NCBI GenBank assembly: GCA_965240325.2
Contig: OZ251252.1
Span: forward strand, 886,025 to 950,024
Length of the DNA stretch: 64,000 bases
From: Rebecca billardiae RCC1528
Lineage: Eukaryota > Protista > Haptophyta
Direction of reading: 5' to 3'
The notes under the pieces were generated by a model, which did no database searches, had not been told where the DNA came from, and worked only from the letters and a program-made list of their open reading frames with translations. This document shows, one piece after another, positions 6,658 through 60,400 of this stretch (positions are counted from its first letter, which is position 1; each line of letters starts with the position of its first letter). Both the position numbers and the translations under genes were made by a program.

Positions 6658-8739
6658 TCACTCCTCGAGCTCGGCCGTGCGCAGGCAGTGCAGCGCGGCG
6701 GGCAGGAACGTCTTGCGCGTCGCTGAGCGGCGCAGCGTCGACAGCAGCAGAGGGCCGTCCGCCGCCGAGCCCGCGCCGCCGCCGGCCGCTGCCCCTGCCG
6801 CGGCCGCGGGCGGCGCAGCGGGCGCAGCCGACACCTCCGCAAAGCGCAGGCCAAAGCCGCCGTCGCCGATGCCCTGCCGCTGGTACAGCGGCTCGGCCAG
6901 CAGGGAGTCCGGGAGCGAGTCCGGGCTGGCCTCGAGCGCGCGGGCGAGGGCGCGCGCGAGCGCCGCGCCGTGCGCGCCCGAGCCCGCCGCGGCGGCGATG
7001 GCGACGCCCTTCAGCCCTTCGAGCACGTCCGGACTCGGCACGCCCGGACTCGGCAGCGGCGCGGTGCCGTCGGCGGCAGCGGCACCACCATCGACGCCCT
7101 CGCCGCCCGCGGCGCCCGCGCCCTCGCCGCCACACCCACGGGCCTCCTCCGCCCCCGCTGCGCCCGCGCCGCCCGCGCCGCCGCCCGCGCGCTCGCGCGC
7201 GGCCGCGGCCGCGCGCAGCACGCGCGGCTTGTCGTCCGCCGCCGTCATCGCCACCACCACCGCCACGCCCCGCTCCGCGCCGAAGCGCGCGAGCACGCCG
7301 TGCAGCGCGGCAGCGGGCGAGGCATGCGGCGCGGTGCGCGCCGCGCGTGCCAGCAGCTCATGCATCGGCGCAAACACAGCGGCGACACCGAGCCCAACTG
7401 CCGCGCCACCGCCCCCGCCGCCGGTGCCACTGCCGCTGTCGACGCCGCCGCCCGCCGCCGCCGCCGCCGGCCGCAGCGCGGCGGCGCCCTCGTCAGCCCT
7501 CGGGCTAGGGTTGGGGTTAGGGTTGGGGTTAGGGTTAGGGTTAGGGTGAGGCCGCAGCGCGGTGACACCCTTGTAGTCGAGGGCGAGGAGGTCGGCCGCT
7601 GAGAGCGCGCTCACGTCAAAGCGCGCGTCGAGCAGCCCGCCCGCCAGCGCCTTCACCGTGCGGAACCCGCCCGCCGCCGCCGCCTCGGGCACGGCGGCCT
7701 TCCGGAGCCATTTTGCATGCGCGGCGGTCGCGCGCGCCGACTCGGCGCCGCCGAGCGCCGCGGCCGCGCCAAGCGGCTCACGCGCGGCCGCGTCGGCGCT
7801 GCCGAGCGCGGCGAGCACGCGGTGCGCGGCGCGCAGGTCACGCGCGGAGAACTTGTGCTGGTCCGCCGCGAAGCCGCGCGTGTCCACCGCGATCGCGCCG
7901 AGCAGCAGGCAGCGCGCCGTCTGCAGCGCCGAAGCGGCGTCCGCGCCCGCGCCCGCGCCCGCGCCCGCGCCCGCGCCCGCGCCGCCGCCGCCGCCGCCGC
8001 CGCCGGCGGGCTGTGCGATCGCGGCGGGCAGCGCCTCGAGCGCCTCGACGACGAGGGTGGAGGCCGAGCCCGCCGCGACGTCGATCGCGCGCAGCGGCGC
8101 CTCCGCGTGCGCGCCCTCGTCGCTGTGGTGGTCCACAATCGCAACGACGCGGCCGCCCAGCATGGCCGCCGCCGCGCCGTCAAGACGGTTGTGGTCAGTT
8201 AGGACGAGGTCGAAGGGGGCGGCGTCGGGGTGCGCGGCGCGCCAGCGCTGCAGCACCTCCGCACTCAGCTCGTCCCAGAACAGCAGCTCCGCCGGCGCGC
8301 CGTCGCCGCTGCCGTCCAGGTCGAAGCCGCAGTGTCGGAACAGCAGCCGCGCGTCGGCGCGCAGGCGGAACGCGCGGCGCTCGAAGGGGATGAGCGGCAC
8401 GACGAGCGGCGCGGCGGCGAGGTCGGCGGTGGTGGGACCCAGCGGGCCCTCCCCGCCACCGACCCCCGCCGCCGCCGCCGCCGCGCGCGCGTACGCCATG
8501 CACGCCGAGGATGCGAGCGTGTCAATGTCTCCCGCCATGTTGCCCAGGACGAGCGTCGGGCGCGGGCCGGCGAAGCCCGGTGGCGGGCCGGCGAGGAGGC
8601 GGCGCTTGGCGTCGGCGAGGAAGGCGTGCATCCCGGAGCGGGGCGGCCCGGCCGTGCCGCACGCCGCGCCGCGCGCTCGGGCGGAGAGGAGGGCGAGCTG
8701 CGCGCACGTGAGCAGCCGCGCGACGCTCGCTGGCCGCAT
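6658..8739 (-). CDS. DHH-family phosphoesterase, exopolyphosphatase PPX1/PRUNE-like
   Basis: Motifs LVLGNMAGDIDT, LVLTDHN, VAIVDHH, GSASTLV, LLGAIAVDT and DLLALDYK. Start could be 8808 or 8739; the latter gives MRPASVARLLTCAQLALLSARA, which is signal-peptide-like. Confidence 0.85.
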   Translation of the reverse strand: MRPASVARLLTCAQLALLSARARGAACGTAGPPRSGMHAFLADAKRRLLAGPPPGFAGPRPTLVLGNMAGDIDTLASSACMAYARAAAAAAGVGGGEGPLGPTTADLAAAPLVVPLIPFERRAFRLRADARLLFRHCGFDLDGSGDGAPAELLFWDELSAEVLQRWRAAHPDAAPFDLVLTDHNRLDGAAAAMLGGRVVAIVDHHSDEGAHAEAPLRAIDVAAGSASTLVVEALEALPAAIAQPAGGGGGGGGAGAGAGAGAGAGADAASALQTARCLLLGAIAVDTRGFAADQHKFSARDLRAAHRVLAALGSADAAAREPLGAAAALGGAESARATAAHAKWLRKAAVPEAAAAGGFRTVKALAGGLLDARFDVSALSAADLLALDYKGVTALRPHPNPNPNPNPNPNPSPRADEGAAALRPAAAAAGGGVDSGSGTGGGGGGAAVGLGVAAVFAPMHELLARAARTAPHASPAAALHGVLARFGAERGVAVVVAMTAADDKPRVLRAAAAARERAGGGAGGAGAAGAEEARGCGGEGAGAAGGEGVDGGAAAADGTAPLPSPGVPSPDVLEGLKGVAIAAAAGSGAHGAALARALARALEASPDSLPDSLLAEPLYQRQGIGDGGFGLRFAEVSAAPAAPPAAAAGAAAGGGAGSAADGPLLLSTLRRSATRKTFLPAALHCLRTAELEE
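7504..7549. repeat. Interstitial telomere-type (TTAGGG/TTGGGG) tract within the DHH gene
   Basis: gctagggttggggttagggttggggttagggttagggttagggtga. Confidence 0.95.

Positions 8740-60400: not shown

What the first reader, a model, noticed from the sequence alone, without database searches (positions are those of the whole stretch)
7469..60076. Window-wide series of telomere-derived inserts: candidate telomerase-driven gene-remodelling process
Seen: seven tracts in 64 kb, all inside genes (7504, ~11627-11680, ~44010-44054, 56735, 57581, 59760, 60035). They grade from perfect with a perfect duplication (59760), through partly decayed with diverged duplications (7504, 57581, 60035), to heavily GC-shifted with no clear duplication (CCCCAA/CCCGAA/CCCGAC at 44010 and 56735). 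Six of seven have the C-rich strand on the mRNA-sense strand, and all four exonic ones are read as Pro-X. Inference: ongoing telomerase-mediated break repair feeds low-complexity loops into proteins and may seed intron sequence. I cannot tell whether this has already been described for this lineage.
Basis: partly seen in the sequence, partly recalled or inferred. Interest (0 to 1): 0.8.

Follow-up and report, generated by a model that had tools for sequence, protein, structure and literature searches.

The report
Telomere-repeat inserts inside algal genes
In this extremely GC-rich, alga-like genome, short pieces of the chromosome-end repeat (TTAGGG) have been pasted into the middle of genes, apparently during DNA repair and sometimes with a second copy of the neighbouring 21-32 bases; several now encode proline-rich loops in conserved proteins.

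Summary
The 64-kb window (80% GC) contains seven telomere-like tracts. All 12 perfect TTAGGG/CCCTAA hexamers lie inside them and none elsewhere.

- **Location:** all seven lie in three genes: a DHH/PPX1-like phosphatase, an EF-hand gene and a HUWE1/TOM1-type HECT ligase. Four are in frame in coding DNA and read Pro-X. Three sit in existing introns. Six of seven put the C-rich strand in the transcript.
- **Duplications:** two tracts are flanked by abutting duplications, 21/21 and 29/32 bases (P=0.003 each). These are two of only four such structures in the whole window. A third (21/25) is marginal, and the one claimed at 60035 is not significant.
- **Codon evidence:** the exonic tracts hold most of the rare CCT proline codons of their genes. 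Loss of that silent T orders the tracts as duplication decay does.
- **Orthologue:** the only one found lacks the 7504 insert.

Best reading: insertion of the organism's own telomere repeat during break repair, probably by telomerase. This is known in mammals, but here it is far denser, has long duplications and is tolerated in exons. Telomerase itself, ongoing activity and intron seeding are not shown. The scan has noted the same phenomenon on other parts of this genome. No reads or close relatives were available.

The parts
7502..7551 (+). Telomere-type tract; the strand given is the one that reads TTAGGG. About 8 units, 4 of them perfect. It lies in frame in the minus-strand DHH/PPX1-like ORF (8808->6658) and reads [16 protein letters not shown] just after the conserved DYK motif.
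   Evidence: The DHH domain is in the same ORF. The orthologue P0001 aligns on both sides in one frame and has a gap over the tract. 6 of the gene's 8 CCT codons lie here.
7469..7493 (.). Left copy of the diverged duplication flanking tract 7504; it ends 8 nt before the tract. The partner copy is 7550-7574. Start-to-start spacing is 81 nt (27 codons). At protein level ALRP occurs on both sides of the tract.
   Evidence: 25 nt, 84%; P=0.053; P=0.075; for the protein view.
7550..7574 (.). Right copy of the duplication flanking tract 7504. It abuts the tract end and starts with GG, in register with the repeat.
11626..11682 (+). Degenerate telomere-like tract: a 17-nt unit GGGTAGGGTTGGGGGTA repeated 2.8 times. 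The C-rich strand is in the transcript. It sits at the 3' end of a 201-nt intron (11810->11610) of a minus-strand EF-hand gene, about 16 nt before the acceptor. There is no flanking duplication.
   Evidence: The exons on both sides match EF-hand models. No duplication was found.
44009..44054 (-). Old, heavily GC-shifted Pro-X tract ([16 protein letters not shown]) in frame in the HUWE1/TOM1-like gene. It lies inside a loop of about 70 residues between DUF913 profile positions 157 and 167. Telomeric origin is possible but not proven.
   Evidence: score 19. DUF913 matches on both sides in the same frame. No duplication. Only 1 of about 8 Pro codons is still CCT (sequence).
56735..56790 (-). In-frame (Pro-Asn)n tract in the HUWE1/TOM1-like gene, between UBM repeats. 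It has 9 units, mostly CCCAAC; one is still CCTAAC. No duplication.
   Evidence: UBM is upstream (E=1e-12) and weakly downstream (E=0.0018, below the curated cut-off) in the same frame. Codon reading.
57581..57638 (-). In-frame tract [20 protein letters not shown] in the HUWE1/TOM1-like gene. It has 10 units, six of them the variant CCCTAC. The coding frame is the same on both sides.
   Evidence: Codon-position GC keeps the same frame until about 57780-57840. 7 of the ORF's CCT codons lie here.
57549..57580 (.). Left copy of the 32-nt target duplication abutting tract 57581 (29/32 identical to 57639-57670; spacing 90 nt). It encodes [11 protein letters not shown]; the right copy encodes [10 protein letters not shown].
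   Evidence: P=0.003.
57639..57670 (.). Right copy of the 32-nt duplication abutting tract 57581.
59760..59780 (+). Pristine (TTAGGG)3.5 insert, 26 nt in register if the flanking GGG and GG are counted. The G-rich strand is in the transcript, the only such case. It starts 60 nt into the 205-nt intron 59700-59904 of the HECT region.
   Evidence: The intron is fixed by the flanking exon, which matches TOM1/HUWE1 HECT.
59739..59759 (.). Left copy of the perfect 21-nt target duplication. It ends in GGG, in register with the repeat.
   Evidence: P=0.003.
59781..59801 (.). Right copy of the perfect 21-nt target duplication. It starts with GG, in register with the end of the tract.
60035..60068 (-). 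Slightly decayed (CCCTAA)n tract of 6 units (two A-to-G changes, one 1-nt deletion). The C-rich strand is in the transcript. It starts 18 nt into the 273-nt intron 60017-60289. The proposed 12-nt duplication (60021-60032 / 60069-80) is not significant.
   Evidence: The exons on both sides match HECT. Duplication P=0.085 to 0.33.

Best explanation
These are interstitial telomeric sequences. They are stretches of the organism's own TTAGGG repeat written into chromosome-internal breaks or nicks during repair, most likely by telomerase extending a 3' end.

**Proposed mechanism (inferred).** A 3' end, often ending in G or GGG, pairs with the telomerase template and receives a few repeats. The extended end then rejoins the other side through 1-3 nt of microhomology (GG). 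In a large share of events the 21-32 bases next to the break end up on both sides of the insert. That could come from two opposite-strand nicks 20-35 nt apart that are filled in. Alternatively, the extended end may re-anneal upstream on the intact strand and copy it again.

**What happens after insertion.**
- Selection acts as a filter. Copies survive mainly with CCCTAA in the transcript. In exons they survive only in the stop-free CCT-AAC frame, in disordered linkers, as (Pro-Asn)n loops.
- The genome's strong AT-to-GC pressure erodes them. The silent T of CCT goes first, then Asn changes to Ser, Thr or Asp.
- Slippage spreads variant units within a tract.

**Shown here:** foreign repeat tracts with abutting duplications, in-frame retention, and ordered decay.

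**Inferred:** the enzyme, the form of the break, and selection as the cause of the strand bias.
For: **1. Insertion signature.** Perfect 21/21 and 29/32 duplications abut two tracts, P=0.003 each. A whole-window scan for 'copy-spacer-copy' structures finds only four, and two of them have a telomere tract as spacer. The duplication is therefore tied to the telomere insert.

**2. The inserts are pure repeat.** No other shared sequence accompanies them.

**3. Register in the pristine event.** The left copy ends GGG and the right copy begins GG, both in register with the repeat. [quoted passage not shown]

**4. Empty site.** The only orthologue found has DYKATALPAAAG where the window has DYKGVTALRP, then the insert, then AAAAAG. 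MAFFT gaps the tract.

**5. Foreign codon signature.** GC3 of the host ORF is 96.5%. CCT makes up 13 of 373 Pro codons and 8 of those are in tracts 56735 and 57581. In the PPX-like gene 6 of 8 CCT codons are in the tract.

**6. Ordered decay.**

| Tract | Silent T kept | Duplication |
|---|---|---|
| 59760 | perfect | 100% |
| 57581 | 7/10 CCT | 91% |
| 7504 | 6/9 | 84% |
| 56735 | 1/9 | none |
| 44010 | about 1/8 | none |

All changes at A/T positions go to G/C.

**7. Telomere type.** Haptophyte telomerase (Pavlova lutheri) synthesises TTAGGG (PMC3622300). Unchecked scan notes place TTAGGG arrays at this genome's chromosome ends.
Against: - Telomerase is not demonstrated. Read on the C strand, the pristine junctions are equally in register (CC / CCC), so the strand synthesised first cannot be told.
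- Only one of three duplicated loci has a clean GGG at the priming side. At 57581 the copy ends GAGGC, with no register, and 7504 is ambiguous.
- Four of seven tracts have no significant duplication.
- Two tracts (11627, 44010) are too degenerate to prove telomeric origin.
- Recurrence of one variant unit inside a tract shows microsatellite-type dynamics after, or instead of, insertion.
- The long duplications have no established cause and are rare in the mammalian precedent (4.5-16% of loci).
- The strand bias (6/7) and frame bias (4/4) are each P=0.06 in this window.
- There is no RNA or population data, so exon retention rests on frame, homology and composition.
Confidence: 0.6

Rival explanations
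1. Retro-insertion by another reverse transcriptase. Telomeric-repeat RNA, or the repeat tail of a retroelement truncated to its tail, is copied at a nick by target-primed reverse transcription. The staggered second-strand cut gives the variable 8-34 bp target duplications.
For: - The variable, long duplications (21, 25, 32 bp here; other lengths in unchecked scan notes) resemble LINE-type target-site duplications (general knowledge).
- The pristine junctions are in register on the C strand as well.
- PMC7215372 itself names retrotranscribed telomeric RNA as an alternative.
Against: - There is no poly(A).
- No element-derived sequence lies next to any tract; the spacers are pure repeat.
- No shared nick-site motif is visible in three loci.
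- No retroelement was seen in the window, although this was not searched exhaustively.
Confidence: 0.12
2. Telomere-templated rather than telomerase-made. Either a broken or stalled 3' end switches template into a chromosome end (or a telomeric circle), copies a few repeats and switches back upstream, creating the duplication; or a free telomeric DNA fragment is captured by end joining at a staggered break.
For: - The copy-tract-copy layout with 2-3 nt microhomology at both junctions is what a back-and-forth template switch predicts.
- Variant units (TTGGGG, GTAGGG) inside tracts could be copied from variant-rich subterminal arrays that unchecked notes report.
Against: - The youngest insert is pure TTAGGG.
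- Fragment capture predicts no junction register and both orientations equally.
- Nothing in the window separates this reading from telomerase.
Confidence: 0.13
3. Ordinary microsatellites or low-complexity coding repeats that merely resemble telomere repeats, grown by slippage from chance seeds. This applies mainly to 44010 and 11627, and less to 56735.
For: - The window is full of short tandem repeats: 939 TRF rows.
- 44010 and 11627 fail the 12-mer test.
- Control hexamers reach similar scores of 17-21.
- Internal 12- and 17-nt periodicities show that slippage occurs.
Against: - There are no isolated seeds anywhere in 64 kb.
- Abutting duplications cannot arise by slippage.
- AT-containing hexamers are strongly disfavoured in a gene with 96.5% GC3.
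- 56735 still contains a CCCTAA unit.
Confidence: 0.05
4. The tracts are kept because they work: as branch-site or pyrimidine cassettes in introns (CUAAC), or as telo-box-like binding sites. On this reading the strand bias reflects function rather than mere tolerance.
For: - CCCTAA in RNA contains CUAAC, a good branch-site match (general knowledge).
- Tract 11627 sits about 16 nt before an acceptor.
- Other scan notes raise the same idea.
Against: - Tract 60035 lies 18 nt after a donor and 59760 is in the G-rich orientation.
- 11627 has decayed to CCCTAC and no longer matches CUAAC.
- Both HECT introns have a CTCAC about 50 nt upstream of their acceptors, independent of the tracts.
- Four tracts are coding.
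- None lies near a gene start.
Confidence: 0.07

Closest known systems
Short interstitial telomeric sequences (ITSs) of primates, rodents and horse, inserted at double-strand breaks (Nergadze et al. 2007, PMC2246262; Santagostino et al. 2020, PMC7215372)
   Same: - A few to about ten units of the species' own telomere repeat are inserted in one step at internal sites.
- Break-site nucleotides are in register with the repeat.
- Occasional direct duplication of the target is attributed to staggered breaks.
- Older copies accumulate mutations.
   Different: - **Density:** three loci meet the paper's criterion (at least 4 units, fewer than 1 mismatch per unit) in 64 kb. Human has 229 in the whole genome, so this window is hundreds of times denser, taking the human genome size from general knowledge.
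- **Duplications:** they flank 2-3 of 7 loci and are 21-32 bp long, against 4.5-16% of mammalian loci.
- **Exons:** four tracts are in frame in coding exons, whereas none of the human ITSs is exonic.
- **Strand:** there is a bias relative to transcription.
- **Decay:** it is driven by extreme GC pressure.
Chromosome healing / neotelomere formation by telomerase at breaks (for example bioRxiv 10.1101/2022.10.31.514589, seen; not read)
   Same: Telomerase adds repeats to a non-telomeric 3' end that has short G-rich microhomology.
   Different: Here the extended end is rejoined to the other side of the break. The chromosome stays intact and the repeats become internal.
Plant telo-boxes, short interstitial telomere motifs (PMC3022908, seen; abstract only)
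   Same: They are telomere-repeat units inside or next to genes, with orientation preferences.
   Different: Telo-boxes are 1-2 units in 5' regions and act as cis-regulatory sites. The tracts here have 3.5-10 units, lie in mid-gene exons and introns, and carry insertion scars.
Intron or indel creation by error-prone break repair that leaves short direct repeats (Daphnia-type intron gains; recalled from general knowledge, not checked here)
   Same: Filler DNA plus a duplicated flank marks a repaired staggered break inside a gene.
   Different: In this window no intron is created. The inserts sit inside older introns or stay in the reading frame.

Membership tests
Short ITS inserted at a DNA break (mammalian type) | The tract consists of the organism's own telomeric repeat | tested here: inconclusive
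   The tracts are TTAGGG-type. Haptophyte telomerase makes TTAGGG (PMC3622300). This genome's chromosome ends are not in the window; only unchecked scan notes report TTAGGG ends.
Short ITS inserted at a DNA break (mammalian type) | One-step insertion relative to an empty ancestral or orthologous site | tested here: met
   At the protein level, orthologue P0001 lacks the 7504 tract. For 59760 and 57581 the abutting duplications reconstruct a single-copy empty site. No DNA-level empty allele was available.
Short ITS inserted at a DNA break (mammalian type) | Break-site processing scars (deletion, filler, target duplication) | tested here: met
   Target duplications of 21/21 and 29/32, P=0.003 each, plus a marginal 21/25.
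Short ITS inserted at a DNA break (mammalian type) | [quoted passage not shown] | tested here: inconclusive
   59760 has GGG, 7504 has GGG but with an 8-nt unclear stretch, and 57581 has none. With n=3 and G at 40% of bases, GGG is not rare.
Short ITS inserted at a DNA break (mammalian type) | Telomerase-RNA-derived sequence next to some tracts (TERC-ITS) | not testable with these tools
   The telomerase RNA of this organism is unknown, and only one window is available.
LINE-type target-primed retro-insertion | Poly(A) or element 3' sequence at one end of the insert | tested here: not met
   The spacers between the duplicated copies are pure telomere repeat.
LINE-type target-primed retro-insertion | Variable-length target-site duplication | tested here: met
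   21, 25 and 32 bp. This feature does not distinguish it from other models.
Telo-box cis-regulatory motif | 1-2 units located in the promoter, 5' UTR or first intron | tested here: not met
   The tracts have 3.5-10 units and lie in mid- or 3'-gene exons and introns.
Introner / transposon-generated intron | The insert supplies the whole intron, including its splice sites, and belongs to a multi-copy family | tested here: not met
   The tracts occupy 21-57 nt of 201-273 nt introns whose ends lie elsewhere. GT...AG pairs around the exonic tracts 7504 and 57581 give lengths that are not multiples of three, read by hand; the host frame continues past both tracts.

The most novel reading that the evidence does not exclude
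In this alga, telomerase (or a telomerase-like activity) is a routine player in the repair of nicks or breaks in transcribed, very GC-rich DNA. It acts preferentially on the transcribed strand and leaves 20-35 bp duplications. On this reading it is a quantitatively important source of new coding low-complexity segments ((Pro-Asn)n and (Pro-Thr)n loops) and of intron material, and perhaps occasionally of new introns.
Probability: 0.3. Interest if true: 0.75.

Novelty: new variant of a known kind. Interest (0 to 1): 0.6.

Why it matters
Telomere-repeat insertion at internal breaks is documented mainly in mammals. There it is rare, never exonic in human, and its link to telomerase is still indirect.

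A compact genome with one such scar every 10-20 kb would be a much richer natural data set for three questions:
- how telomerase is kept away from, or recruited to, internal breaks;
- what kind of break yields 20-35 bp duplications;
- how orientation relative to transcription shapes survival.

Many of the scars here carry long duplications that reconstruct the empty site. The window also gives a concrete, datable route by which repair filler becomes protein sequence, namely Pro-Asn loops in HUWE1- and PPX1-type proteins. The silent codon position serves as a built-in clock under extreme GC pressure.

Tried and rejected
- **Reads.** No public run holds the stretch. The best runs share 5-6% of words. 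Laying four of them gave only pieces of about 40 nt on GC-rich low-complexity stretches and on the 60035 telomere tract. Expression, splicing and presence/absence polymorphism therefore could not be tested.
- **Orthologues for empty sites.** The PPX search gave one relative at 39% identity, which was used. Its contig is 74% GC and has no tract. The low-complexity piece of the HUWE1 gene found nothing. Two metagenome scans gave nothing, then a 27% fragment. The HECT-exon search returned an unrelated 38.5% GC contig, L004.
- **Tracts as small introns.** Rejected for 7504 and 57581. The available GT...AG pairs give 64, 70 and 79 nt and 65 and 77 nt, none a multiple of three (my count). The host frame continues past both tracts.
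- **Duplications as a general habit of this repeat-rich genome.** Rejected by the whole-window scan.
- **A simple decay clock from unit purity.** Rejected. 57581 has fewer perfect units than 7504 but a better duplication. The silent-T measure orders them consistently.
- **Literature.** Searches found no description of this in haptophytes or other algae. The library is partial.
- **Rules followed.** Exons of the spliced HECT and EF-hand genes were searched one by one by reference and never joined.
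Full report
**What is there**

The window is 80% GC overall, and 84-89% across 40-60 kb. A search for two TTAGGG units with at most one mismatch gives 14 hits on both strands, against none in 100 shuffles.

All 12 perfect TTAGGG/CCCTAA hexamers of the window lie inside these tracts. Outside them there are none, although composition predicts about 3 to 9. Hexamers of the same composition in other orders give 0-4 segments each. 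The exception is one control that picks up a (GT)n-like microsatellite.

Five tracts are clearly telomere-type: 7502-7551, 56735-56790, 57581-57638, 59760-59780 and 60035-60068. Two are degenerate. 11626-11682 is a 17-nt unit repeated 2.8 times, and 44009-44054 is a mixture of CCCCAA, CCCGAA and CCCGAC. These two are only plausible relics.

**Where the tracts sit**

*Tract 7504.* It lies in a single minus-strand ORF (8808->6658) with a DHH domain. It reads [16 protein letters not shown] directly after a conserved DYK motif.

*Tract 11627.* It lies at the 3' end of a 201-nt intron (11810->11610), about 16 nt before the acceptor. Both flanking exons match EF-hand models.

*The other five tracts.* They lie in one plus-strand gene running from about 41.6 to 62.0 kb. 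This gene has DUF913, UBA, UBM and HECT parts, and its exons match TOM1/HUWE1 best.
- 44010 lies in a loop of about 70 residues between DUF913 profile positions 157 and 167, with the same frame on both sides.
- 56735 lies between UBM repeats in one frame. The downstream UBM match is weak, E=0.0018.
- 57581 is flanked on both sides by the same coding frame, judged by translation and by codon-position GC. The frame changes only near 57780-57840, where I suspect a small intron (57752-57834) or an indel.
- 59760 lies 60 nt into intron 59700-59904.
- 60035 lies 18 nt into intron 60017-60289. The exon between these two introns aligns without gaps to TOM1 residues 92-127.

So six of seven tracts have the C-rich strand in the transcript, and the four coding tracts all use the CCT-AAC frame. 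Within this window each has a binomial P of only 0.06 (my arithmetic). I could annotate only about half of the window by domain search. I therefore cannot weigh the statement 'all inside genes' statistically.

**Are they insertions?**

*Flanking duplications.* The 59760 tract is flanked by a perfect 21-nt direct duplication, and the 57581 tract by a 32-nt duplication at 29/32. In both, the copies abut the tract exactly. Against 6000 random sites with the same geometry, each has P=0.003. Looser nulls give 0.006-0.011.

*Whole-window scan.* I searched the whole window for non-trivial copy-spacer-copy structures: copy at least 18 nt, spacer at least 8 nt. Only four turned up. Two have a telomere tract as spacer. 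The third is two copies of a dispersed palindrome, and the fourth is GC-rich low complexity. The duplication is therefore linked to the telomere insert, not to the general repeat-richness of the genome.

*Weaker cases.* The duplication at 7504 is 21/25 with an unclear 8-nt stretch before the tract (P about 0.05-0.07). The one proposed at 60035 is 10/12 and not significant (P=0.085-0.33). The remaining three tracts have none.

*Orthologue.* The only orthologue of the PPX-like protein that I could find (39% identity, from a 74% GC contig) aligns on both sides of the 7504 tract in one frame. It reads DYKATALPAAAG where the window reads DYKGVTALRP, then 27 extra residues, then AAAAAG. MAFFT places a gap over the tract.

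**A codon signature and a clock**

The HUWE1-like ORF has a GC3 of 96.5%. CCT accounts for 13 of 373 proline codons, and eight of those 13 lie in tracts 56735 and 57581. In the PPX-like gene, six of eight CCT codons lie in the tract. The tracts are compositionally foreign to their host genes.

In the CCT-AAC frame the only silent AT-to-GC change is T to C. This explains why the older exonic tracts read CCCAAC throughout while still coding Pro-Asn.

| Tract | Silent T kept | Duplication identity |
|---|---|---|
| 59760 (intronic) | perfect | 100% |
| 57581 | 7/10 CCT | 91% |
| 7504 | 6/9 | 84% |
| 56735 | 1/9 | none detectable |
| 44010 | about 1/8 | none detectable |

The fraction of proline codons that keep the T orders the loci as the duplications do.

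Every change at an A or T position goes to G or C. The decay is not a clean clock, however. One variant unit recurs within a tract: CCCTAC six times in 57581, a 12-nt pair in 7504 and a 17-nt unit in 11627. Slippage must therefore have homogenised or extended the tracts after insertion.

**Mechanism**

The pristine event reads: copy ending GGG, then TTAGGG x3.5, then copy beginning GG. This is what is expected if a 3' end paired with the telomerase template, was extended, and was then rejoined through 2 nt of microhomology.

In mammals the same class of event is documented. [quoted passage not shown] Target duplications occur in 4.5-16% of loci and are ascribed to staggered breaks (PMC2246262; PMC7215372). 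Haptophyte telomerase (Pavlova lutheri) makes TTAGGG (PMC3622300).

I therefore read the series as ITS insertion during repair, most likely by telomerase, with confidence 0.6. That a repeat was inserted with a duplication is shown. The enzyme and the break geometry are inferred.

Read on the C strand, the junctions are equally in register. An RT copying telomeric RNA, or a template switch into a telomere and back, would give the same product. 57581 shows no register at the priming side.

The long duplications are unexplained. Three possibilities are two opposite-strand nicks 20-35 nt apart, an unprocessed long flap, or re-annealing of the extended end upstream on the intact strand. The window cannot decide between them.

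The strand bias could be selection. TTAGGG in RNA carries UUAG|G and G|GUUAGG splice-site look-alikes and a TAG stop. This reading was also reached by an earlier follow-up on another part of the genome. Alternatively, it could reflect preferential extension of ends on the transcribed strand.

**What is not supported**

Nothing here shows intron birth. The intronic tracts are 21-57 nt additions to introns of 201-273 nt whose splice sites lie elsewhere. GT...AG pairs around the exonic tracts would break the frame.

'Ongoing' activity rests on one perfect copy. No run in the public read index holds this organism, and metagenome and protein searches gave no close relative.

**Comparison and novelty**

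Three loci meet the mammalian criterion of at least 4 units with fewer than 1 mismatch per unit. That is three in 64 kb, against 229 in the whole human genome. None of the human loci is exonic, and the authors considered exonic insertion unlikely to survive. Here four in-frame tracts sit in conserved genes.

My literature searches found no account of this in haptophytes or other algae, but the library is partial.

First-reader notes and two follow-ups from this scan describe the same kind of insert, with 8-34 bp duplications, on other parts of this genome. I did not test those.

I rate this a new variant of a known kind.

Noticed in passing
window 1174-1418 and 17199-17272: The 14-nt palindrome GAGATTGCAATCTC (or CAGATTGCAATCTC) occurs 7 times in two clusters, against 0 expected. 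One pair forms one of the four copy-spacer-copy structures in the window. It looks like a small dispersed palindromic element.
   Followed up: partly
window 63158-63982: A unit of about 410 nt is present twice in tandem at 98% identity, close to the right end of the window, just beyond the HECT gene.
   Followed up: no
window 57752-57834: The coding frame of the HUWE1-like gene shifts from one frame to another between about 57780 and 57840. An 83-nt GT...AG interval would fit, much shorter than the 201-273 nt introns seen elsewhere; an assembly indel in the (GGC)n runs is an alternative.
   Followed up: partly
window 3250-6300, minus strand: TypA/BipA-type translational GTPase gene. BipA_C and EFG_C match in ORF 3250-5313, and the GTPase N-terminus is visible around 6290-5990. 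A (GT)n-like microsatellite lies at 5773-5877.
   Followed up: no
window 40000-58000: GC stays at 85-89% over nearly 20 kb of one gene. Open reading frames of 2600-4600 codons exist on both strands at once, so ORF length means nothing here. GC3 is 96.5% while GC2 is 75%.
   Followed up: partly
window 44055-44110, 57676-57710 and 57900-57932: Long (GGC)n runs coding poly-Gly lie next to telomere-derived tracts 44010 and 57581 in the same loops. The loops seem to collect several kinds of repeat filler.
   Followed up: no
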